From IMG/VR virus record IMGVR_UViG_3300028666_000022, positions 186,001-250,000 of that record: a stretch of DNA of 64,000 nucleotides. One strand, written 5' to 3'. Position 1 is the stretch's first letter. Every line of letters starts with the position of its first letter. The position numbers and the translations under genes were made by a program. The notes beneath the pieces were generated by a model, which saw only the letters and a list, made by a program, of their open reading frames with translations, was not told where the DNA came from and did not search any database. Positions 8,363 to 63,383 of the stretch are shown here, in pieces.

Positions 8363-8827
8363 TTAAACATTTTCAATATTATATTCTTCAGGTATTAATA
8401 ATTCACATTTATTTGTATTATATATTCCAAACGTACTATCAATTTCTCTAAATTTATCTTCAATTTTATTTAATATTAATCCAGACAACATAAAAAGTTT
8501 AGCATTATATTCATCATAAGGAAAATCAATAATAATTTTTTTAAATTTTATTTCTTCAACAACAGGAATTAATTCATTTTTACTATATTCTAATAATTTA
8601 TATAATAAAAAATTTTTCTTAATATTATGATCAAATGAAACTAATTCTAAATTTATTTCATTATTATTCGTATTTTTTGAAATAAAAATAAAATATTTAA
8701 ATTTTTCTGAATCATATGTGCCATTAATCTTAATTTGTTCTTCTTTTTGTTTCTCATATTGTTTTCTTAAATCATCAAAACCTAAACGAAAAACAGTATT
8801 TATTTTTTCTTTTTTCATATTAATCAT
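8363..8827 (-). CDS. Hypothetical protein
   Basis: 154-aa ORF overlapping the exonuclease stop. Confidence 0.55.
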   Translation of the reverse strand: MINMKKEKINTVFRLGFDDLRKQYEKQKEEQIKINGTYDSEKFKYFIFISKNTNNNEINLELVSFDHNIKKNFLLYKLLEYSKNELIPVVEEIKFKKIIIDFPYDEYNAKLFMLSGLILNKIEDKFREIDSTFGIYNTNKCELLIPEEYNIENV

Positions 8828-9876
8828 AATTTAGTTTTACTATTTTTATAATACTCTGTTAATAACTGTTTTTCATTCATTATTACAGTATAAAACGGTT
8901 CGATATAATTAACAAATGTACTTCCATACACAGTCAAAAATTCATCTTCCACCATCATTTTATATAAATTCTTACTTCCTCTATTCTCTGGTGATAATGG
9001 CATTTCTAATTGTTCTAACTCATTTAAAGCCTGTTCATTTAAAAACGGTTCTTTTAAATTTATTAATTTATGATTTAATTTTAACCTCTCGACATTATTT
9101 AATAAATTCTCAAATGCCTTTAATGGTTTTAATTTCTTTGAAACTCTTTCCTTATTTAATTCTGCAGCTTTTTGACACACATCTTTTACACTAAAATGTT
9201 TGAACTGCATCTCTGGAAAATATTTTAATAATGTCGGTTCTTTTAACCCATCAATTCCTTTTATATTATCTGAAACATCTCCACATATTATTTTCATTGT
9301 TAATGCATTGGAATAATGATAACCAAAATTAAAAAAATAATTGGACTTTGTTACTGGCTGCTCTATATTTGAAAATATTATCGTTATATTCAAATCTAAT
9401 AATTGTGAAAAATCTCGATCATTGGTGAATATATGAATTTCTTCAGTATTATTATGATCTATGCAATATTTAGCAATTAGGTCATCAGCTTCCACCTCTA
9501 ATATTTCTAACTGTCTTACGAAGATTTCCTCAAGATAAGCTTGCGTCCTCTTGCGATTTGATAAAATACTCTTTGATTTCTCTTCTTCTCTTTTGATTTC
9601 AGCTTCAGACATTTCGATCTGGCTGTACCACTCCTTATTCTTTCTTGTAGATTTATAATCACTTGATAATCTGTGTCTTAGAACCCCACCATTTTGTCCA
9701 TCCCAACAAACAATAACTTTATTTATTTTATAATCTTTAATTAATTTACGTAATTTTGTGAGAAATCCATATAATCCAGAAATTTGCCCAAATGATTGTG
9801 TAAAAGTACTCTTACCTCCTTCAAATGAACGTTTTAGTAAATAATTACCATCAATTAATAATGTTCTATTTTTCAT
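8824..9876 (-). CDS. 5'-3' exonuclease / flap endonuclease (Pol I N-terminal or T4 RNase H-like)
   Basis: LLIDGN, VCWDG, YKSTRK, EADDLIA, TNDRDFSQL, GDVSDNIKGIDG motifs. Confidence 0.9.
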   Translation of the reverse strand: MKNRTLLIDGNYLLKRSFEGGKSTFTQSFGQISGLYGFLTKLRKLIKDYKINKVIVCWDGQNGGVLRHRLSSDYKSTRKNKEWYSQIEMSEAEIKREEEKSKSILSNRKRTQAYLEEIFVRQLEILEVEADDLIAKYCIDHNNTEEIHIFTNDRDFSQLLDLNITIIFSNIEQPVTKSNYFFNFGYHYSNALTMKIICGDVSDNIKGIDGLKEPTLLKYFPEMQFKHFSVKDVCQKAAELNKERVSKKLKPLKAFENLLNNVERLKLNHKLINLKEPFLNEQALNELEQLEMPLSPENRGSKNLYKMMVEDEFLTVYGSTFVNYIEPFYTVIMNEKQLLTEYYKNSKTKL

Positions 9877-9879
9877 TTC

Positions 9880-11496
9880 TTATTTTGTTTTAGGGAAAAA
9901 ATCATCTAACCAGCCATTTTTAGATGCAAAATCATAGAAACTTCTTTTTTTTGCTGCATAGTCTTTTCTACATGAATATTCTGTAGCATGATTTTTACAA
10001 ATAACATAATTATATTCAATTTTAGGTTTTTTTGGTAAAAATTCATCCAACCAATTAAATTTTACACAAACACGATATAATGTTTGGTTTTCTTTAGATA
10101 AAATACATCTATTCGAATATTTCAATGTTTCTTTTCTAGCATTTTCTTTATTTAAATAAAATTCTCTTGTTGTTAAATCTCTTTTTTTAATGGGGAATAA
10201 TTCATCTAATAAATTAAATTTAGTACAAAGACGATAAAGAGTATGATTCTTACTATAAAGCTCACTTCTGTTTTTAAATCCAACAACCTTATTTCTACAA
10301 TAAATTTCATCTTTATTTAATATTGGAAAAAATTCATTCAACCAATTATTTTCTAAGCAAATTCTATAGATTTTGGGGTTAGATTTATATAATTGTGTTC
10401 TATTTTCAAACTTTATTACTATATTTTTTATTTCTTCTTTATTTATTTTATTTTCAATTATTGGGAAAAATTCATCTAGCCATTTAGATTTTAAAGATTT
10501 AGAATATGCTGTTCCTTCATAATCGAAAAATGCTCTTTTATTAGTAAATTTAGATGCGACTAATTTACAACGAGATTTGGTCCAATAATTTTTTCCTTTA
10601 GATTTTTTTGTGTTCATATTAACACATACTTCATCTAAAATCCCCATTTGTTGAGCTGTTGAATAAGCACTACTGTTTTTAGCAAAAGCTGTACGTGTTT
10701 CAAATTTTTTTGCTTCTTCGAAAATTAGTTCTTTAGTCCACTTTCTTTGATTTCCACCTAAACTACCAGTTTTTGCTTTATTAATTTTTATTAATCCTTG
10801 TTTTTCTTTTTCTTCGAGAACAACACCTTCCATTTCAGATGCTAAATGAGCATTAATTATTCCAGAAATTTCTATTACTGGTTTAACACTATTTTTAATA
10901 ATATTATTTTTTTTTATAAATTCGAAAATACTACCTTCTCTCATATGATCACCATGTCTTCTTTTTATATTATTAGTTACACCAACATAAACATATTTAT
11001 CAAAAAATGTATATGAATATATCATTCTTTCTGTTTCTAAAACAACCGATTTTTTATTCATATGATCACATATTTCATTTAAAAAACCAGATTCTTTAGA
11101 AAAATTATAAATTTCTCGATTATTTTTATGAAATTCAGATTTAGTTTTCCATTTTTTAGAAAATTCTAAACATTCTAATTTAGACCATTTATCTAATTTA
11201 ATACATTCGTAAATTTCAGTAAGCCATCCATTTTGTCTAGCTACTGCACAAAGTGATAATTCTGAATGAGCCAACTCAAGTATTGAAGAATAAGTTCTAG
11301 CTATCTCCAAACATTTTGTTTTATTCCAAAATCCATTTGGTTTATGTTTTCTATTTAAATTTTTTAAAAGTTCTTTATTCCACCCTTTTCTATAAATTAA
11401 ATTATAAATGATTTTATTTTCCCTTTTTAAATCAATTAAATTCTCATAATTTTCAATTATTTTAATACAATCTTCTTTAGTATATAAACTTTTCAT
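9880..11496 (-). CDS. GIY-YIG endonuclease flanked by nine ~40-45 aa helical repeats
   Basis: IYSYTFFDKYVYVGVTNNIKRRHGDH...E...N catalytic core; repeats of the form W-T-K-x-x-C...Y...W-L-D-E-F-F-P. ATG at 11496 preferred over TTG at 11508. Confidence 0.75.
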   Translation of the reverse strand: MKSLYTKEDCIKIIENYENLIDLKRENKIIYNLIYRKGWNKELLKNLNRKHKPNGFWNKTKCLEIARTYSSILELAHSELSLCAVARQNGWLTEIYECIKLDKWSKLECLEFSKKWKTKSEFHKNNREIYNFSKESGFLNEICDHMNKKSVVLETERMIYSYTFFDKYVYVGVTNNIKRRHGDHMREGSIFEFIKKNNIIKNSVKPVIEISGIINAHLASEMEGVVLEEKEKQGLIKINKAKTGSLGGNQRKWTKELIFEEAKKFETRTAFAKNSSAYSTAQQMGILDEVCVNMNTKKSKGKNYWTKSRCKLVASKFTNKRAFFDYEGTAYSKSLKSKWLDEFFPIIENKINKEEIKNIVIKFENRTQLYKSNPKIYRICLENNWLNEFFPILNKDEIYCRNKVVGFKNRSELYSKNHTLYRLCTKFNLLDELFPIKKRDLTTREFYLNKENARKETLKYSNRCILSKENQTLYRVCVKFNWLDEFLPKKPKIEYNYVICKNHATEYSCRKDYAAKKRSFYDFASKNGWLDDFFPKTK

Positions 11497-11510
11497 TTTA
11501 AAATACAATT

Positions 11511-11541
11511 AAAAAGTGAATGGCATTTTACTACCATTCAC
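11511..11541 (-). terminator. Intrinsic terminator after recA-like gene
   Basis: GTGAATGG...CCATTCAC stem followed by a T-run on the minus strand. Confidence 0.65.
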
Positions 11542-11553
11542 ATATAAATTTAT

Positions 11554-12669
11554 TTATTCACCTTTTTTTTCTAAAAAATTACTAACATAAGATGAATCAT
11601 CATTATTAGTAATTTCAGTAATTTTCGTTTCAATATCTTCAGCATTTATATCATCACCAAAAAGATTTCTAAAATAAAGTATATTTTTCTTCTTATATAA
11701 ATCAATTTCATCAGGAAATACAAAACCATGTGGTGTTGATATTATAGTACCTTCCATTGATATACCCCCTAGTGGACCATCAACATGATTTTTCGCGATA
11801 TTAACCTTTGCCTCTATACCATAAGACACATCACGTTTTTTGGAAGTAGCTGTAACTCTTTTAGTTCCATGTGTAATTATGCCGCCAAAGTTATAAATTA
11901 ATCTTGAACCGAAGAAAAACGTCTCGCCCCCTTTGTGCTTAACTACTTTATTCATAGAGTCGTACCAGATCTTTTGAACACACACGATAGTGTTAGTATA
12001 TTGTTTATTTATTTTTCTACTATTTGGAATCGTATTATTAAGTAATGACATAAATGATTTTTCATATGCTCCAGAATTCCACATATTATTATCACTCTCA
12101 CTCTTTTCTAAAGCATTTATTGTTTTAATACAATTTAACGTACCAATTGAATCAATTCCAAAAAATAATTCATAAGGTAAATTACCTGCATTTTGTTCAT
12201 CTAAAAAGAAGTAAATACATTTAGCAAGATCTTCAATAGAAGCTTCATTTCTATCTTTATCTTGTTTTTTACCGAAATTTTCAAGTAAATATTCATTATC
12301 AATTAAAATATAATCACCTTTCCAATCGAAACCCATTAATTCTAATCTATCAACACCTAAATTATTTTCAGTATCGATAATAATTGGTAACAACCCCATT
12401 TTCTGCGCGTTAACTAAGCCACGACAAACAGCGGTCGATTTTCCGGTATTGGAGTACCCACGACACAAATTAACAAATCCCTTAGCAAAGCCGGGCAGTC
12501 CAGTTGATTTTTCAAGTGCATCATCGCATTTAATCCATTGTAATGGTTTATCTGGTATATCTTCAGCACCAACCTTTTTCTTAAAATCATTTAAAGAAAA
12601 TTCCTTTTTTGCAGTAGGTTTTCTAACTGGATTATTAACAGGAACTTCAATATTTTCTTTTTTAGCCAT
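11554..12669 (-). CDS. RecA/UvsX-like recombinase
   Basis: Walker A RGYSNTGKST, IIIDTE, FGIDSIG, KGG...F, KNHV. Confidence 0.85.
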   Translation of the reverse strand: MAKKENIEVPVNNPVRKPTAKKEFSLNDFKKKVGAEDIPDKPLQWIKCDDALEKSTGLPGFAKGFVNLCRGYSNTGKSTAVCRGLVNAQKMGLLPIIIDTENNLGVDRLELMGFDWKGDYILIDNEYLLENFGKKQDKDRNEASIEDLAKCIYFFLDEQNAGNLPYELFFGIDSIGTLNCIKTINALEKSESDNNMWNSGAYEKSFMSLLNNTIPNSRKINKQYTNTIVCVQKIWYDSMNKVVKHKGGETFFFGSRLIYNFGGIITHGTKRVTATSKKRDVSYGIEAKVNIAKNHVDGPLGGISMEGTIISTPHGFVFPDEIDLYKKKNILYFRNLFGDDINAEDIETKITEITNNDDSSYVSNFLEKKGE

Positions 12670-12733: not shown

Positions 12734-12766
12734 AAAAAGATAGGGACACTAAGTTCCCCATCCTTT
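12734..12766 (-). terminator. Intrinsic terminator after SSB gene
   Basis: Minus-strand AAGGAUGGGGA...UCCCUAUCUUUUU stem with G-U pairs and U tail. Confidence 0.6.
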
Positions 12767-12778
12767 AAGAGTATGAAA

Positions 12779-14005
12779 TTAAAAGGGTAAATCTTCGTAG
12801 TCGTTATCACTAGAGCCACTAGTTTCATCAATTTCTAGTGATTCATCAGCAACTTTACTTTTAGCAGTAATATCGACAGCATCTTCACTATAAGTACCAA
12901 CTTTACTAGGAGTAACATTAGTAATGTTTACACGTGCATCATTTTCGTCTAAATCAGAAGCTTGTTGAAAATCATCTTCTTCATCAGCATCAAGATTTCT
13001 TTGACGAGTATTAGCTTTTTCTTCCAAGTCAGGACGGCCCGGAAAAACCCAATGTTTATTTTTTTGATCAGTATCTTCCCAATAAGGAGAAGTACCATTA
13101 ACGATCATTTCAAGGAATTCTAAAGCAGTTGTATTAGGAGCAACTTTAGGTTTAAAAACATCTCTCCAAGTAATATCATCTTCAAGCCATTGTCTTGCAA
13201 CAATAGAATCATTATGAAGAGGTGATTTACCACGTGCAGTAATAGCTGAAATAGACTTATATGTCTTACCCTTTTCTTTACTAAAAGTAGCTACAGTATC
13301 AGCCATAGTAATATAAAGATCAGTACCATTATTAACATCAGCAAAACTAACACCGTTAATGTCAATATAATCTTCAAGAACTGGATATAACTTATCTATC
13401 GTACCCTGATTTTTGAAACTATGTTTAAATCTCCAAAATTTAACACCGTTATTTTCTCTCGATCTATCTATACCCCTTACGATATAAAATCGTTTTGCTT
13501 CCCAATTATTTGCTTCAAAGAATATAGCTTTATTTTTTTCAAAAACTACTTTCTGAGCGTCAGTTAAAATTTCTTTTTTAATGAACTTAATTGATTGATC
13601 TTGTTTAGCAAGAAGTTTCTTAGCTCTTTCACAAAGAGGACATGGAGCAGAAACTAAAATAGGATTTCCATTACCGTCTAACATCACATTACCATCCTTA
13701 TCATATTTTTTTACTTTAGGATCATTGTGAGCTGGACAATAAACAACTGTGTTAAGTTTTTTAAAACCACCTGCAGCGTTAGTTGGAACAACGTGAAAGA
13801 ATGCTTCTGTGTAAAAATTTTTAGATTTGTAAGGTAAGATTCTAAAGATTTCTTTAGTGTTTCGAGGAACAAAATACTTTGCCAGTATTTCTTCTTTTGT
13901 TTTTTTCTTATCTTTCACTTGATTTTTTTGGTAGTCAGAAAAAGATTTTCTGAATTCAGACAAATCACCACCTTGTGGGTTTGTTGTTGCATTTTGATTT
14001 TCCAT
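12779..14005 (-). CDS. Single-stranded DNA-binding protein (T4 gp32-like)
   Basis: FRILP, Zn-ligand-like H...YCP...PCPLC, GVKFWRF, acidic tail DYEDLPF; adjacent to recombinase. Start revised to ATG 14005 (MENQ). Confidence 0.8.
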   Translation of the reverse strand: MENQNATTNPQGGDLSEFRKSFSDYQKNQVKDKKKTKEEILAKYFVPRNTKEIFRILPYKSKNFYTEAFFHVVPTNAAGGFKKLNTVVYCPAHNDPKVKKYDKDGNVMLDGNGNPILVSAPCPLCERAKKLLAKQDQSIKFIKKEILTDAQKVVFEKNKAIFFEANNWEAKRFYIVRGIDRSRENNGVKFWRFKHSFKNQGTIDKLYPVLEDYIDINGVSFADVNNGTDLYITMADTVATFSKEKGKTYKSISAITARGKSPLHNDSIVARQWLEDDITWRDVFKPKVAPNTTALEFLEMIVNGTSPYWEDTDQKNKHWVFPGRPDLEEKANTRQRNLDADEEDDFQQASDLDENDARVNITNVTPSKVGTYSEDAVDITAKSKVADESLEIDETSGSSDNDYEDLPF

Positions 14006-14058
14006 TTTTTGATAATTACAAATAAAATTATTTTTTTCAATTATAAAAATTGACAATA

Positions 14059-18317: not shown

Positions 18318-19070
18318 TTAATCGTATTGACTAAAACTATTCTGTATATCTATTTTAGATGACTTCGGTAAATCATCAAAATCTGCAATATATGTACCAT
18401 CTGGTAATTCTCTTATACCTTTTTCTTTACCATTTCTTTCATTAAATGAATTGCCTTGCCAAAAATCATTTAAATTAAAATAATAAGGATATGATACATT
18501 CGTTTTATTCATTAATTTTTCACTATTTGTAGGTTCTCTAACCTCTTGAACATCTGCATTCAATGCTTCTAATTTAGAATTTAAACCCTGAACAGTAGTA
18601 TTTAAACCTTCTAATTGATCATTAATGCTTTGCATTGCTGCAATATTATGTTTAATTATATCATTCTGAATATCATCAACTTTTTGAACTGGTTGAATAG
18701 ATGCGTTAATATCTGCTCCCATTGGATTTACTGGGGCAGTAGTTGTAGGTGGAGCAATACCTGCAGTACTATCAATAGGTGGTTGTGTTGCTTCTCTATC
18801 AATTGGCTGATCATTTGATGGTGCAGGAGGTTCACTTCCTTCTGGTTTAGGTGCATCTTCTTGATCACCAGCTTCATTTGTAAAAGAAGGACTTGCTGGA
18901 ACAGGTAATCCATCACTAGTATTATATAATTCAACAGGAAGATTATCAAATTCTTCGTTATTATCTACCAGTGGACGATATTTAGGAGATTCATTGATCT
19001 TATAATCATAACGATATTTAATCTTCCTAAGTTGTTCCTCAAAAAGTTTATCTTTTTTTATATCTTTCAT
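18318..19070 (-). CDS. Hypothetical protein with Pro-rich linker and coiled coil, probable head-associated
   Basis: KINE and FTNE sites, acidic/Pro-rich middle, coiled coil, SYPYYFNLNDFW. Confidence 0.55.
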   Translation of the reverse strand: MKDIKKDKLFEEQLRKIKYRYDYKINESPKYRPLVDNNEEFDNLPVELYNTSDGLPVPASPSFTNEAGDQEDAPKPEGSEPPAPSNDQPIDREATQPPIDSTAGIAPPTTTAPVNPMGADINASIQPVQKVDDIQNDIIKHNIAAMQSINDQLEGLNTTVQGLNSKLEALNADVQEVREPTNSEKLMNKTNVSYPYYFNLNDFWQGNSFNERNGKEKGIRELPDGTYIADFDDLPKSSKIDIQNSFSQYD

Positions 19071-49974: not shown

Positions 49975-50166
49975 ACTATTCGCTTGATCTTGTAATCTTT
50001 CTATTTCATCATTTTCTTTTTGTAATAAATGAAGAAAATATCGTCTTTTATAAATAGGAATATTTTCTATATAATCTGCTTGAAATTTTGCATGTTTAGT
50101 TAAAATATAAATTTCTTCCTGAACCATACGTTTATAAGATTCTACTAGTTCGAGGGGAAAAAAAAA
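49960..50166 (-). CDS. -1 frameshift extension of the tail assembly chaperone (G/GT-like)
   Basis: Slippery T9-C4 run at 50154-50166; the -1 frame reads PLELVESYKRMVQEEIYILTKHAKFQADYIENIPIYKRRYFLHLLQKENDEIERLQDQANSKSRH*. Confidence 0.7.
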   Translation of the reverse strand, partial: FFFPLELVESYKRMVQEEIYILTKHAKFQADYIENIPIYKRRYFLHLLQKENDEIERLQDQANSKSRH

Positions 50167-51077
50167 TCCACACCTACGCTCAAAGTAGCATTAAATTTAT
50201 AACCATCTTTAGCTGTAAATTCATAATTCATATCTACATCAGGACTAACTTCTAATATTTTTTTACGAATAGTATATGCATCGAGTGCTGGCATAGCATC
50301 AACAAATTTATCAATATAAGCTCTTTCTGTTTTTTCATTAATTGCAACAATATGTGCTTTTAATTTTAATGTATTATATTGACTAACATCTTCATTATAA
50401 GCTTCTTTAATTGCTTCTGCTTTTTTAAAAATTTGATTTTCATCACCTGAACTAAGTAATCTAAATACAACTGTTTTTTTACGCATAGGTAACTCAACAA
50501 CGAAATTTCCATCTTCATTTGGAAGTTCAACTAATGTCTTATATTTTAATTTTAATAAATTAACAGTGGTTTTAAATGGAATACCACTTCTAGGATCAGT
50601 TACTTGTACAGTATAATCTGAACCATAACTTGAAGTACGAAGAAATAAAATAATTGCATTTCTATCACCAGCTAACAAATGTTCAGGATTAACTCCACTG
50701 GTTTTAATTTTTCTTTTTAATAATAAATCTAAAACACTACCATTTTCAATTAATGAAGGGGTTGTTAATAAATCTTCATCTTTAGATGTCATATATTCAA
50801 CATTTACTTCAGAAATGTGATTAGCATCGAATAAACCTTTTGATGGTAATTTAATTAATTCATAAGAAGTCATTAAATCAGGATCAGTTTCTTTTGACAT
50901 TGTTTTCTCAAAATCTTGAGGATTAAAAGGTTTGGCTCTTGGTACTGAATCAGTAATTACTTTATTATTGTTTGGTAATGAATCAATATTATCTGATGTA
51001 TTATTAGTACTTTCTTTATATTTTTTTAAAACATCAGAAATGTTTTCTTTTTTTGGTTGATTCAAATTTTCTTTCAT
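50145..51077 (-). CDS. Tail/baseplate assembly chaperone (T4 gp26-like)
   Basis: IKLPSKG, YMTSKDEDLL, GDRNAIILFLR...YG, PDVDM, ends VGVDFFFPSN; upstream of tape measure. Confidence 0.75.
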   Translation of the reverse strand: MKENLNQPKKENISDVLKKYKESTNNTSDNIDSLPNNNKVITDSVPRAKPFNPQDFEKTMSKETDPDLMTSYELIKLPSKGLFDANHISEVNVEYMTSKDEDLLTTPSLIENGSVLDLLLKRKIKTSGVNPEHLLAGDRNAIILFLRTSSYGSDYTVQVTDPRSGIPFKTTVNLLKLKYKTLVELPNEDGNFVVELPMRKKTVVFRLLSSGDENQIFKKAEAIKEAYNEDVSQYNTLKLKAHIVAINEKTERAYIDKFVDAMPALDAYTIRKKILEVSPDVDMNYEFTAKDGYKFNATLSVGVDFFFPSN

Positions 51078-51108
51078 TTTATAAAATTTTATATTTTATT
51101 ATTGTTTT

Positions 51109-51117
51109 TATAAATAC
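51109..51117 (-). promoter_or_regulatory. Candidate late promoter GTATTTATA
   Basis: 31 nt upstream of ATG 51077, in the divergent intergenic region. Confidence 0.5.
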
Positions 51118-51253
51118 AAGCATTTTAAAAAATTTATAAAATAATATAAAAATAATTCAAGATTATTTAAAATTTTACGTATTAGTAGTTAAAGTAAAAC
51201 TTTAAGTAGAATAAAAGAATTAATTTAAATAATAATTGTATTTCATTGATTAA

Positions 51254-51379
51254 ATGAAAACTAAAATGAAACAAAATAGTGTTGATTCTAAAAAAGAAGA
51301 AAAAATTTTAGAAGTAGAAAATAAAAATTCTAATAAAGATGATCTATTAGAATTGGATGGAGAAATAACAGCATTATAA
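51254..51379 (+). CDS. Small hypothetical protein (41 aa)
   Basis: Hand translation MKTKMKQNSVDSKKEEKILEVENKNSNKDDLLELDGEITAL. Confidence 0.35.
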   Translation: MKTKMKQNSVDSKKEEKILEVENKNSNKDDLLELDGEITAL

Positions 51380-51388
51380 TATTTTTAT

Positions 51389-51706
51389 ATGACTGAATCA
51401 AAAATATTAGTTATTTATATTGGTGTTGCTGGAATAAGATCTGAAGACATTTCAGATTATGTTAATAAAATTTATAAAACAATTTGTCCACCAACATTTT
51501 CTGGCTCGATTGTAGTTATTCCAATTCAAGAATTGAATACTAGAATTGAGTGTATTAATCCTAAATATATTACGAACGAAGAATTAATAAAAGAACATAC
51601 AGAATTAATGACTAATTTACAAAAAGAATTAAAATTTCAATTAGAACAACTAAAAGAAAATAATAAGATTAAACAAAATAAGAAAAAGAAGAATGAAAAT
51701 AAATAA
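51389..51706 (+). CDS. Hypothetical protein
   Basis: 105 aa, ILVIYIGV...TRIECINP. Confidence 0.6.
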   Translation: MTESKILVIYIGVAGIRSEDISDYVNKIYKTICPPTFSGSIVVIPIQELNTRIECINPKYITNEELIKEHTELMTNLQKELKFQLEQLKENNKIKQNKKKKNENK

Positions 51707-52493
51707 TATAATAAATTCATTTAAAAATAAATTTCAAACAAAACTAAATCTTAATTCTAAATTAAAAATAGGAATTGATATAAATGAAGTTCTACGAGCA
51801 CGTTGGCTACAAATGGATAAATATTACTATTCTGAATTTCAAAATGAATTATTAAGTCCAGATCAACCTTATGTTTATGACTTTTTTAAATACTATAAGT
51901 GGGAAGATACTGTTGAAAATAGTAAAGTATTACGTGAGCCGGGAGAATTACCTGAAGATATTAATCCTATTGATTATCAAGTAGATCCAATTACTGGTGA
52001 AGCTCCTGTTGATTTTCTTTTATTTAAAAAAGATGAGGAAAAAAAATTAACTGCTAAAGAAGTTTATAATAGGTTCATGTATGAAGATTTTGTATTTGAA
52101 ATATTTGGTACTGCACCTATTATGTATAAAGGAATGGATTTACATGTTAAAAATTTTTATGAAAAATATAAAAATACTGTTGAATTTATTCTCATCTCAA
52201 AAGAAAATGAATTTAGTATACCATCAACACTTATGTTTTTAAGCAGAATGATGAGTAGATTTACTAAATATAAATTTATTAAGACCGATGATGAAATATG
52301 GTCAGATGTTGATATTTTAATAACTACAGATCCTGATATTATTGATTCTAATTTACCTAAAGGAAAAAAAATAATTAAATTAGATAGGCCATATAATATG
52401 AAATGTAAAAAAACTGGTTTAATTAAAGATTTAATTCACATAAACGATTTATTTGATAATGAAGATTTTAAAAAAATAATTAAATATGAGTAA
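51693..52493 (+). CDS. HAD-superfamily 5'(3')-nucleotidase-like protein
   Basis: KIGIDINEVLR (degenerate DxD motif), DILIT, RPYN. Confidence 0.55.
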   Translation: MKINNIINSFKNKFQTKLNLNSKLKIGIDINEVLRARWLQMDKYYYSEFQNELLSPDQPYVYDFFKYYKWEDTVENSKVLREPGELPEDINPIDYQVDPITGEAPVDFLLFKKDEEKKLTAKEVYNRFMYEDFVFEIFGTAPIMYKGMDLHVKNFYEKYKNTVEFILISKENEFSIPSTLMFLSRMMSRFTKYKFIKTDDEIWSDVDILITTDPDIIDSNLPKGKKIIKLDRPYNMKCKKTGLIKDLIHINDLFDNEDFKKIIKYE

Positions 52494-62705: not shown

Positions 62706-63338
62706 TTATTTTATGTTTAACCATGTCTTTCCAAGAATTATTGAAGATATTGTTGCTTGTGTTACATTGTATATTTTAGCTATTTTTGTTTGTGTAAAAT
62801 TTTCCACAGTAAATAACTTTCTAATATTTATTATGTCATCAGATTTTAATTTCGACATTGGGTGTTTTTCACATGTAAAAATTCCTTTTCTACTTATAGA
62901 AATTTTGTTTTTACTTTCTTCGGAGAGTTTATAATTAAATTTTGGATGTAAATTTCCTTTCTTACCATACATAGGATTTTTATCACCAGTTTTTTGATTA
63001 GAAGGAATTTTAGTATCTTTATTAAGATTTTTATTTATGTGAATTTCTTTTGGATCATTAATGTTATAACCAAAATTCTTATCAAATGAATTGTAATATA
63101 AAATATATTCCTTTTCTTTAGTTAATAAGTCATCAAGTTTACATTCTTCAACTATGAAAAATTCAAAAGCAGTTATAGTATATTTGTTCCAAGATAATTG
63201 TAGATGAGAGTTGTGATGTTTATTGTGATTTAAATACCATTTGTGATCACGCCATCTTTTACTTATATTGGTAGAACTACCAATATAAATTTTATTATTT
63301 ATTTTATTAACAATTATATAAATTCCAGTTATTATCAT
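62706..63338 (-). CDS. GIY-YIG homing endonuclease with NUMOD3-like and HTH domains
   Basis: TGIYIIVNKINNKIYIGSS...RWRDH...GYNI; KNPMYGK, LSEESKNKIS; start revised to ATG 63338. Confidence 0.88.
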   Translation of the reverse strand: MIITGIYIIVNKINNKIYIGSSTNISKRWRDHKWYLNHNKHHNSHLQLSWNKYTITAFEFFIVEECKLDDLLTKEKEYILYYNSFDKNFGYNINDPKEIHINKNLNKDTKIPSNQKTGDKNPMYGKKGNLHPKFNYKLSEESKNKISISRKGIFTCEKHPMSKLKSDDIINIRKLFTVENFTQTKIAKIYNVTQATISSIILGKTWLNIK

Positions 63339-63344
63339 ACAATA

Positions 63345-63383
63345 AAAATTTAACCACAAATACAAATATTATATCTGTGGTTA
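63345..63383 (-). terminator. Intrinsic terminator after the tail tube gene
   Basis: Minus strand TAACCACAGATA...TATTTGTGGTTA followed by AATTTTT. Confidence 0.6.

What the first reader, a model, noticed from the sequence alone, without database searches (positions are those of the whole stretch)
9880..11496. GIY-YIG nuclease embedded in an array of nine ~42-aa helical repeats
Seen: 3 repeats precede and 6 follow the GIY-YIG core. Each has a conserved scaffold (W-T/S/N-K-x-x-C ... F/Y-x-N/T-R-x-x-L/F ... Y ... W-L-D-E-F-F-P) and variable positions in the putative second and third helices (e.g. RTAF/KRAF/RTQL/RSEL/RCIL/RKDY and SSAY/GTAY/PKIY/HTLY/QTLY/RSFY). Inference: a modular, possibly code-like DNA-recognition array conceptually similar to TALE or zinc-finger arrays. 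Its position between the recA and exonuclease genes suggests a free-standing homing endonuclease whose target lies in a neighbouring gene.
Basis: partly seen in the sequence, partly recalled or inferred. Interest (0 to 1): 0.6.

Follow-up and report, generated by a model that had tools for sequence, protein, structure and literature searches.

The report
Homing nuclease flanked by nine helical modules
A soil jumbo phage carries a selfish GIY-YIG homing-nuclease gene wedged exactly between its recombinase and exonuclease genes. The nuclease core is flanked by nine copies of an uncharacterised ~43-residue helical module that probably targets DNA, but nothing shows a TALE-like code.

Summary
The ORF at window 9880-11496 (-), 538 aa, has a GIY-YIG core with all catalytic motif residues. 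Three ~43-aa repeats precede the core and six follow it, and each is significant in a leave-one-out test.

The homing-endonuclease reading is well supported:
- 59 of 80 related phage loci have the recA stop and exo start abutting or at most 140 bp apart, with no such gene.
- 10 carry a full gene of this family at that junction, with 3 to 5 repeats.
- 8 carry only decayed remnants.
- In one lineage the gene is 99-100% identical between genomes whose recA is only 79-93% identical.
- Same-site genes have at least 4 separate origins.

The repeat is modular. Family members have 3-12 copies in any split around the nuclease. It is also fused to an HNH nuclease and occurs beside NUMOD1/HTH modules. 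It folds as independent small helical units, and the protein is basic (pI 9.5). It has no Pfam, PDB or literature match, so DNA binding is inferred, not shown.

The TALE-like "code" is not supported. Repeats are only 14-46% identical, about 8 columns vary strongly, and no solenoid is predicted. This is a new variant of a known kind.

The parts
9880..11496 (-). Homing endonuclease gene (538 aa from the ATG at 11496, stop at 9880-9882; an alternative TTG start lies at 11508)
   Evidence: ORF list and translation P0001. PHROG 20046 (unknown function) E 2.8e-41. 63 family members at E <= 2.4e-17.
9877..11553 (-). Whole inserted segment between the recA stop codon and the exo start codon
   Evidence: In 9 of 13 HEG-less relatives examined the recA stop and exo ATG abut or overlap (TAAATG or ATGA); the others have spacers of 8, 11 and 64 bp, and one apparent 26-bp overlap. 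In the window they are about 1.68 kb apart.
10756..11034 (-). GIY-YIG catalytic core, residues ~155-247 (Y160, Y170, G172, R180, H181/H184, E223, N239)
   Evidence: Pfam. Six-frame Pfam 25.2 bits. Profile match to I-TevI 1mk0 E 3.9e-6. Foldseek 1ln0 prob 0.92. Conserved columns. Residues.
11356..11484 (-). Repeat 1 (res 5-47), the most degenerate
   Evidence: Leave-one-out 13.1 bits against a shuffle maximum of 7.4.
11200..11331 (-). Repeat 2 (res 56-99)
   Evidence: 25.6 bits.
11059..11193 (-). Repeat 3 (res 102-146), ends in the family-typical ...ICDHM
   Evidence: 33.1 bits.
10615..10743 (-). Repeat 4 (res 252-294), directly after the core's KTGSLGG motif
   Evidence: 35.9 bits.
10456..10590 (-). 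Repeat 5 (res 303-347), first of the WLDEFFP-type units
   Evidence: 34.6 bits.
10318..10452 (-). Repeat 6 (res 349-393)
   Evidence: 59.2 bits. 43-44% identical to repeats 7 and 8.
10186..10314 (-). Repeat 7 (res 395-437)
   Evidence: 42.6 bits.
10027..10158 (-). Repeat 8 (res 447-490)
   Evidence: 45.8 bits.
9886..10017 (-). Repeat 9 (res 494-537), C-terminal ...WLDDFFPKTK end shared with many family members
   Evidence: 29.8 bits. Family sequences.
11516..11541 (-). Terminator-like hairpin plus T-run between the recA stop and the HEG start
   Evidence: Consensus scan and sequence. Function not shown.
11554..12669 (-). Upstream neighbour: UvsX/RecA-like recombinase
   Evidence: PHROG 97 UvsX-like E 5.2e-8. 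Pfam RecA weak, E 0.0055. 80 related loci at 64-82% identity.
8824..9876 (-). Downstream neighbour: 5'-3' exonuclease (RNase H/FEN-like). Its first ~40 nt are the candidate target region.
   Evidence: Pfam 5_3_exonuc_N E 1.3e-25. The 5' end is conserved at DNA level in HEG-less loci, and HEG-associated synonymous differences occur at codons 4 and 13. The target role is inferred.

Best explanation
This is a free-standing (not intron- or intein-borne) GIY-YIG homing endonuclease gene. It has inserted exactly at the junction where the UvsX/RecA-like gene and the 5'-3' exonuclease gene abut or lie within 140 bp of each other in HEG-less relatives. The host is a ~340-kb, 25% GC jumbo phage from rhizosphere metagenomes.

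Likely mechanism, inferred from the biology of the T4 Seg/Mob and I-TevI enzymes: during co-infection with a relative that lacks the gene, the enzyme cuts the HEG-less allele near the junction. The best candidate is the highly conserved first ~40 bp of exo. Recombinational repair from the HEG-bearing genome then copies the gene and nearby flanking markers across.

The I-TevI-like catalytic core sits in the middle of the protein. The nine ~43-aa units (three helices plus a short C-terminal turn, three before and six after the core) are independently folded, basic modules joined by short linkers. They most likely act as nuclease-associated modular DNA-binding domains. In that role they would replace the NUMOD/HTH/zinc-finger modules of orthodox GIY-YIG enzymes and together read a long target on both sides of the cut.

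Shown: the repeats, the catalytic motifs, the insertion polymorphism, the remnants, the modular reuse of the repeat with other nucleases, and the independent folding.

Inferred: DNA binding by the repeats, the location of the target, and current activity of this copy.
For: 1. Nuclease. All GIY-YIG motif residues are conserved. The family profile matches I-TevI at E 3.9e-6 and the fold matches.

2. Mobility. The 80 related loci divide as follows:
- 59 have recA and exo less than 140 bp apart with no HEG. In 9 of 13 examined in detail the stop and start codons abut or overlap.
- 10 have a full family member in the same gap, with 1+2, 2+1, 2+3 or 5+0 repeats.
- 8 have only remnants: truncated or frameshifted genes, or single-repeat ORFs of 42-84 aa.
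- P0016 (4+3 repeats) also sits between a recA-sized gene and exo.

3. Horizontal movement. Between L025 and L034 the HEG is 99-100% identical. RecA is 79-93% identical. Exo falls from 97-99% near the HEG to 93-95% further away.

4. Repeated invasion. In a tree of the catalytic core, same-site HEGs need at least 4 origins.

5. Repeats as nuclease-associated modules.
- 456 units occur in 65 proteins, 3-12 per protein, in any N/C split.
- The same array follows an HNH_3 nuclease in P0065.
- It coexists with HTH_7/NUMOD1/I-HmuI-NUMOD modules in P0064.

6. Physical properties.
- pI is 9.5 and net charge +38. Columns 12-18, 21-26, 29 and 32-34 are basic or polar with almost no acidic residues.
- The hypervariable columns (6, 8, 18, 21, 25, 29, 30, 32) alternate with the conserved, mostly hydrophobic columns along the three helices; surface exposure was not measured.
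- AF2 gives pLDDT 88.9 but pTM 0.38, with four short helices per unit.

7. Candidate target.
- The exo 5' end is strongly conserved at DNA level in HEG-less loci.
- Codon 13 is CTT in 40 of 48 HEG-less sequences. It is TTA or TTG in 11 of 12 HEG+/remnant sequences (Fisher 2e-6). Codon 4 is AGA in most HEG-less sequences against CGT in half of the HEG+ ones.
- The codon-13 contrast holds in 6 of 9 nearest-neighbour pairs.

8. The element is fixed and identical in four further metagenome runs. In two of them (X2, X6) contigs bridge both junctions.
Against: - No experiment or solved structure links the repeat to DNA.
- The repeat has no Pfam, PDB-sequence or literature match. Its best structural matches are at noise level (Z <= 3.5).
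- The window's own copy has no close relative (best 26-38% identity), so recent mobility of this particular copy is not shown.
- Neither candidate start has a recognisable ribosome-binding site, and a terminator-like hairpin lies just upstream, so expression may be low.
- No RNA data exist.
- The codon associations could partly reflect shared ancestry. The window's own nearest HEG-less neighbour already has TTA at codon 13.
- Different repeat numbers at one site are hard to reconcile with a single shared long target.
Confidence: 0.7

Rival explanations
1. The gene is a homing endonuclease, but the repeats are not sequence-reading modules. They bind DNA non-specifically, or bind a protein (for example the recombinase filament, SSB or replisome) or RNA. 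Specificity would come from the catalytic core and linkers.
For: - No known DNA-binding fold was recovered.
- Repeat number varies from 3 to 9 among genes at the same site.
- The consensus unit is close to charge-neutral, with conserved acidic positions 5, 9, 10, 19, 38 and 39.
- Small three-helix units such as FF and Slx4-CCD domains, which are protein binders, appear among the weak structural matches.
Against: - The array is reused with a different nuclease class (HNH) and sits where NUMOD/HTH modules sit in orthodox enzymes.
- Hypervariable positions alternate with the conserved mostly hydrophobic columns of the helices, as expected for specificity residues.
- The protein as a whole is strongly basic.
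- GIY-YIG cores alone have very little sequence specificity (established knowledge of I-TevI).
Confidence: 0.17
2. The gene is no longer, or never was, a selfish homing element. It is a phage nuclease used for host-DNA degradation, exclusion of competing phages or anti-defence, retained by selection at this position.
For: - The copy is intact, with all catalytic residues.
- It is identical in five metagenome runs.
- The genome carries seven GIY-YIG ORFs.
- Homing endonucleases are known to mediate exclusion between related phages (established knowledge; a related theme appears in PMC10448857 and PMC13096335, listed and seen only as abstracts).
Against: - Most relatives lack any gene at this junction, and several carry decaying remnants. 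That fits the invasion-decay-loss cycle of a selfish gene, not a conserved function.
- Same-site genes have several origins.
Confidence: 0.08
3. The array is a true programmable code like TALE repeats, with each unit reading a fixed number of bases through one or two residues.
For: - The units are tandem, of regular size and with a conserved scaffold.
- A limited set of columns is hypervariable.
- Copy number changes easily.
Against: - Units are 14-46% identical rather than near-identical.
- At least eight columns are hypervariable, across all three helices.
- No solenoid packing is predicted.
- Linkers vary in length, with periods of 44 to 53 residues.
Confidence: 0.05

Closest known systems
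I-TevI and the orthodox GIY-YIG homing endonucleases (I-BmoI, T4 SegA-G)
   Same: - The catalytic core has the same motifs and fold.
- It is phage-borne.
- It is modular, with a nuclease tethered to small DNA-binding units.
- Like the Seg enzymes it is free-standing, lies between conserved genes, and is sporadically distributed.
   Different: - The core is internal, not N-terminal.
- There are no NUMOD1/NUMOD3/zinc-finger/HTH matches. Instead there are nine copies of one uncharacterised ~43-aa unit on both sides.
- The same genome also has an orthodox GIY-YIG + NUMOD3 + HTH gene at window 62706-63365 for contrast.
NUMOD modules (nuclease-associated modular DNA-binding domains; PF07453, PF07460, PF22083)
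   Same: - Small helical units strung on linkers.
- Shared between GIY-YIG and HNH nucleases.
- Variable number and order; the repeat here behaves the same way and co-occurs with NUMOD1 in P0064.
   Different: - No sequence similarity was detected to any NUMOD model.
- Copy numbers are much higher (up to 12).
- Units are homotypic rather than mixed.
PHROG 20046 and GenBank 'GIY-YIG nuclease domain-containing protein' / 'hypothetical protein' of Rhizobium phage RHph_TM3_3_9, Vibrio phages Va3, VH7D, phi-ST2 and Lak phages
   Same: Same family: E 2.8e-41 to the PHROG and 23-33% identity by tblastn. Architecture is the same, with several copies per genome.
   Different: Those entries carry no functional or domain description. 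The window's copy has more repeats than the isolate-phage copies matched and has no close relative.
TALE and C2H2 zinc-finger arrays
   Same: Tandem small units with a conserved scaffold, variable surface positions and easy copy-number change.
   Different: - Unlike TALE: units are highly diverged, many columns vary, and no superhelix is predicted.
- Unlike zinc fingers: there is no four-ligand metal site. The family consensus keeps Cys7, Cys41 and His43, but five of the nine units here (repeats 5-9) have replaced the last two with F and P.

Membership tests
GIY-YIG nuclease superfamily (PF01541) | GIY and YIG motifs, catalytic Arg, His, Glu and C-terminal Asn in an alpha/beta core | tested here: met
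   Y160, Y170-V-G172, R180, H181/H184, E223 and N239 are present. The core has two strands of 7 residues, a third of 4, and three helices. The family profile matches I-TevI at E 3.9e-6. Foldseek 1ln0 gives prob 0.92, TM 0.67. Pfam is 20.3 bits on the protein (below 22.6) and 25.2 bits in the six-frame search.
Free-standing homing endonuclease gene | Sporadic presence or absence at one conserved syntenic position among related genomes | tested here: met
   59 loci have recA and exo less than 140 bp apart with no HEG; 10 are occupied, 8 hold remnants, 1 is unclear and 2 are uninformative.
Free-standing homing endonuclease gene | Signs of horizontal spread and of the invasion-decay-loss cycle | tested here: met
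   In L025/L034 the HEG is 99-100% identical against recA at 79-93%. Truncated or frameshifted remnants occur in L063, L014, L039, L076 and L060. Same-site HEGs have at least 4 origins. This is not shown for the window's own copy, which has no close relative.
Free-standing homing endonuclease gene | Site-specific cleavage of the HEG-less allele and gene conversion | not testable with these tools
   The only evidence is indirect: HEG-associated synonymous variants in exo codons 4 and 13.
Orthodox I-TevI-like architecture | N-terminal GIY-YIG domain followed by C-terminal NUMOD/zinc-finger/HTH modules | tested here: not met
   The core lies at residues ~155-247 of 538, with three repeats before it. 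No NUMOD or HTH family hit was found.
TALE-like code arrays | Near-identical repeats differing at two residues, packed as a continuous superhelix | tested here: not met
   Pairwise identity is 14-46%. Eight or more columns have entropy above 3.3 bits. pTM is 0.38 with locally confident units.
Helix-turn-helix DNA-binding domains | Tri-helical fold with a recognition helix, and similarity to a known HTH family | tested here: inconclusive
   The model has three helices of 8, 7 and 9 residues plus a short fourth. Best structural Z is 3.5, with DNA-binding and unrelated three-helix domains mixed. No Foldseek, Pfam or PDB-sequence match was found.
PHROG 20046 | Significant match to the family profile | tested here: met
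   E 2.8e-41, 143 bits, three stretches. The PHROG has no assigned function.

The most novel reading that the evidence does not exclude
The ~43-aa unit is a previously undescribed class of nuclease-associated DNA-recognition module. Each unit would read a few base pairs semi-independently through the hypervariable positions of helices 2 and 3. Arrays on both sides of an internal GIY-YIG (or next to an HNH) nuclease would then be naturally shuffled to retarget homing endonucleases. That would make it a zinc-finger-like, potentially re-programmable targeting system that evolved in phages.
Probability: 0.25. Interest if true: 0.8.

Novelty: new variant of a known kind. Interest (0 to 1): 0.5.

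Why it matters
Free-standing GIY-YIG homing endonucleases are well known, so the gene's biology is ordinary. What is not described in any library or paper I could reach is the targeting part. It is a homotypic array of up to 12 small helical units placed on both sides of the nuclease, reused with HNH nucleases, and changing in number between genes that occupy the same genomic site.

If the units bind DNA sequence-specifically, they would be a new natural modular DNA-recognition scaffold joined to a monomeric nickase/nuclease. That is of interest for genome-editing reagents (compare I-TevI-TALE fusions, PMC4065259, listed and seen only as an abstract). It would also bear on how homing endonucleases acquire new targets.

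The recA|exo junction, with 59 empty, 10 occupied and 8 decayed sites plus a second sporadic nuclease-like gene next door, is also a clean natural data set for the homing cycle in uncultured jumbo phages.

Tried and rejected
- Self-BLAST of the protein found no internal repeats because only the full-length hit is reported. I replaced it with HMM and leave-one-out tests.
- Megablast of 6 kb against GenBank phages found no match.
- NCBIfam gave nothing useful.
- Pfam on the whole protein, and on 144 single repeat units at E <= 1, showed no recurrent family.
- PDB sequence profile of the repeat returned only chance-level hits.
- Foldseek PDB on the whole model found only I-TevI for the core. On the single repeat it found nothing.
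- VIA-align against 48,161 chains gave best Z 3.5 with nothing standing out.
- BFVD returned uncharacterised viral proteins and generic GIY-YIG endonucleases.
- ESM Atlas returned unnamed clusters, mostly phage.
- Literature: three searches, including motif strings, plus a term search within the 2006 GIY-YIG phylogenomic survey (PMC1564403), found no description of this repeat.
- PF26058 is listed in precomputed hits for two relatives. It is absent from the local Pfam copy, so I could not see what it covers. It may describe part of this family.
- The reads tool showed identical contigs in four other rhizosphere runs and no HEG-skipping joint. Contigs cannot show absence of a minority allele. 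No RNA run holds the region.
- Not run: the large representative-protein search (costly; the family was already identified, and no claim here rests on absence of relatives).
- Not run: a protein-DNA complex prediction (the complex tool takes no DNA chain).
- Rejected: the repeat as chance or low complexity, a TALE-like solenoid, and zinc-finger membership (no four-ligand site).
Full report
**Setting.** The window is bases 186001-250000 of a 339,898-bp IMG/VR virus record with direct terminal repeats, estimated complete. GC content is about 25%. Near-identical contigs occur in 11 rhizosphere metagenome runs from 11 studies. Around the finding all genes lie on the minus strand. Their order is:
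- a 425-aa protein at 12779-14056;
- a UvsX/RecA-like recombinase at 11554-12669 (PHROG 97, E 5.2e-8; Pfam RecA weak);
- the gene in question at 9880-11496;
- a 5'-3' exonuclease at 8824-9876 (Pfam E 1.3e-25).

**The observation.** The ORF encodes 538 aa from the ATG at 11496. Nine units of about 43 residues are present, three before and six after a central domain. Each unit was scored against an HMM built from the other eight. The units reach 13-59 bits, while about 500 shuffles of the same unit never exceed 14.3 bits. Repeat 1 is the weakest but still beats its own shuffles (13.1 against 7.4).

The central domain is a GIY-YIG nuclease. Y160, Y170, G172, R180, E223 and N239 are invariant or nearly so in an alignment of 63 family members. 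The family profile matches the I-TevI catalytic domain at E 3.9e-6. The AF2 model superposes on 1ln0 with TM 0.67.

**A homing endonuclease gene.** I fetched 80 viral-contig loci whose recombinase is 64-82% identical to the window's and mapped the four neighbouring genes on them. Gene order is conserved. The loci divide as follows:
- In 59 loci the recombinase and exonuclease genes are less than 140 bp apart with no HEG. Of 13 examined in detail, nine have the stop and start codons abutting or overlapping as TAAATG or ATGA. Three have spacers of 8, 11 and 64 bp, and one shows an apparent 26-bp overlap.
- Ten loci carry a full-length member of the same protein family in that gap. These are shorter (249-366 aa) and have 1+2, 2+1, 2+3 or 5+0 repeats around the core.
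- Eight loci carry only remnants: a gene truncated inside the GIY-YIG domain (L063), a frameshifted copy (L014/L015), single-repeat ORFs (L076, L060) and a 42-aa relic (L039-L041).
- One locus (L006) is unclear and two (L046, L075) are uninformative.

A further relative, P0016 (4+3 repeats), also lies between a recombinase-sized gene and the exonuclease on a 66-kb contig.

Between L025 and L034 the inserted gene is 99-100% identical. The recombinase gene is only 79-93% identical. Identity in the exonuclease gene declines from 97-99% next to the insert to 93-95% further away. That is the pattern expected from recent transfer with co-conversion of flanks.

In a tree of the catalytic cores, the genes that share this site are not one clade. 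Well-supported branches force at least four origins. The window's copy groups (99/98 support) with P0006, P0013, P0014, P0016 and P0036. Of these, P0013 and P0006 lie in quite different gene neighbourhoods.

Presence/absence, decay, transfer and repeated invasion together are the signature of a free-standing homing endonuclease gene. In the window the inserted segment is 9877-11553.

**Where it may cut.** This part is inference. The recombinase C-termini are variable. The first ~60 nt of the exonuclease gene are strongly conserved at DNA level in HEG-less loci. Two synonymous codon states differ between HEG-less and HEG-bearing or remnant alleles:
- Leu codon 13 is CTT in 40 of 48 distinct HEG-less sequences. 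It is TTA or TTG in 11 of 12 HEG-associated ones (p = 2e-6).
- Arg codon 4 is AGA in 44-45 of 48 HEG-less sequences, against CGT in 6 of 12 HEG-associated ones.

Each HEG-associated lineage was paired with its nearest HEG-less neighbour, judged on distal exonuclease sequence. The codon-13 contrast holds in 6 of 9 independent pairs and is never reversed. This fits target-site variants that travel with the gene, but shared ancestry is not fully excluded. The window's nearest empty neighbour already has TTA.

**What the repeats are.** Iterated HMM searches find 456 units in the 65 proteins recovered by the word search. There are 3 to 12 units per protein, split in every way around the core (1+3 up to 11+1).

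The same array also appears in other contexts:
- Ten units follow an HNH_3 endonuclease domain in P0065.
- In P0064 three units precede a GIY-YIG core that is followed by HTH_7, NUMOD1 and I-HmuI-NUMOD-like modules.

A unit shared between two nuclease classes, and occupying the place of NUMOD modules, is by that logic most likely a nuclease-associated DNA-binding module.

Physical properties agree with this. The protein has pI 9.5 and net charge +38, and the family median pI is 9.45. Columns 12-18, 21-26, 29 and 32-34 are basic or polar with almost no acidic residues. The conserved columns are mostly hydrophobic (W2, C7, A11, Y14, F20, A27, Y28, A31, W36, L37), and the most variable columns (6, 8, 18, 21, 25, 29, 30, 32) alternate with them along the three helices.

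AF2 on the whole protein gives mean pLDDT 88.9 but pTM 0.38, with confidence dips at the linkers. Each unit forms helices of about 8, 7, 9 and 4 residues. A single unit modelled with 144 aligned units gives the same picture. The units therefore look like independently folded beads on a string.

**Limits.** Nothing ties the unit to a known DNA-binding fold:
- No recurrent Pfam family.
- No PDB sequence relative.
- No Foldseek match.
- Best exhaustive structural Z is 3.5, with DNA-binding (TnsD C-terminus, NtrC4, Myb R2) and non-DNA-binding (FF, Sda) three-helix domains mixed.

PHROG 20046, the family's own profile, has no function. Cultured-phage relatives are annotated as hypothetical or merely as GIY-YIG-domain proteins. 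I found no paper describing the repeat. One precomputed Pfam accession on two relatives (PF26058) could not be inspected.

**The TALE/zinc-finger analogy.** The modular part holds; the code part does not.
- The nine units are only 14-46% identical. Only repeats 6-8 look like a relatively recent triplication, at 43-46%.
- Many columns vary.
- No solenoid is predicted.
- Spacing is irregular.
- Genes at the same site carry between three and nine units.
- The family consensus keeps Cys7, Cys41 and His43. Repeats 5-9 here have replaced the last two by Phe and Pro (WLDEFFP), so a zinc site is not a general feature.

**Expression.** A terminator-like hairpin with a T-run lies at 11541-11516, between the recombinase stop and the HEG start. 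Neither candidate start has a clear ribosome-binding site. No RNA run holds the region. Contigs from four other runs are identical to the window over the parts they cover. In two of them (X2, X6) they bridge both junctions of the insert, and no contig skips it.

**Verdict.** This is a real and statistically solid repeat array in an intact GIY-YIG homing endonuclease of unorthodox architecture, inserted at a well-documented polymorphic site. The selfish-gene biology is ordinary. The repeated module is an uncharacterised, probably DNA-targeting unit: a new variant of a known kind. Its sequence specificity and any code remain to be shown.

Noticed in passing
window 62706-63365 (-): A second, orthodox GIY-YIG homing-endonuclease-like gene (219 aa). 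It has an N-terminal GIY-YIG domain (E 1.3e-10), NUMOD3 (E 1.6e-6) and a C-terminal HTH. It is a useful contrast to the repeat-bearing gene in the same genome.
   Followed up: partly
whole genome G000 (positions 18785, 124431, 182904, 196801, 249087, 296556, 298478/298892): Eight GIY-YIG matches fall in seven ORFs of the 340-kb genome, all over the Pfam cut-off. One 478-aa ORF has two GIY-YIG domains. Only the gene studied here carries the 43-aa repeats.
   Followed up: partly
L007:4111-4629, L013:288-800, L026:5454-5957, L029:4109-4636, L043:3794-4369, L078:1639-2166: In some relatives a second sporadic gene (~170 aa) sits between the 425-aa protein gene and recA. It is Cys-rich at the N-terminus with an HHWNY motif, and matches PHROG endonuclease / endonuclease VII-like families at E 1e-5. 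It is absent from the window and from most loci, so it is probably another free-standing nuclease gene one junction upstream.
   Followed up: partly
window 12779-14056 (-): The conserved 425-aa protein upstream of recA has no Pfam or PHROG match. It has a Cys/His cluster and a long acidic C-terminal tail ending in DLPF. This resembles single-stranded-DNA-binding proteins (gp32 / SSB tail, from memory, not tested).
   Followed up: no
window 8824-9876 (-), first 40 nt (9837-9876): Synonymous codon states at exo codons 4 (AGA vs CGT) and 13 (CTT vs TTA/TTG) track absence or presence of the inserted gene across related loci.
   Followed up: yes
window 12735-12766 (-) and 11516-11541 (-): There are two terminator-like hairpins with T-runs, one after the 425-aa gene and one after recA. 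The count does not exceed shuffled expectation (2 found vs 1.3 expected).
   Followed up: no
L082 (contig carrying P0013): A close relative of the window's catalytic core lies next to HSP70, ankyrin-repeat, phage-lysozyme and class-I tRNA-synthetase genes. That context looks more like a giant virus or very large phage than the recA-exo module.
   Followed up: no
window ~50000-52000: GC skew changes sign (about -0.2/-0.3 before 50 kb, +0.2/+0.3 from 52-58 kb) where gene orientation flips from minus to plus strand.
   Followed up: no
family repeat consensus (A3), columns 7, 41, 43: Most family repeats keep Cys7 ... Cys41-x-His43 (WLDEICSHM). A minority, including repeats 5-9 here and the C-terminal unit of many proteins, end in WLDEFFP instead. 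Whether the Cys/His form binds metal is unknown.
   Followed up: no
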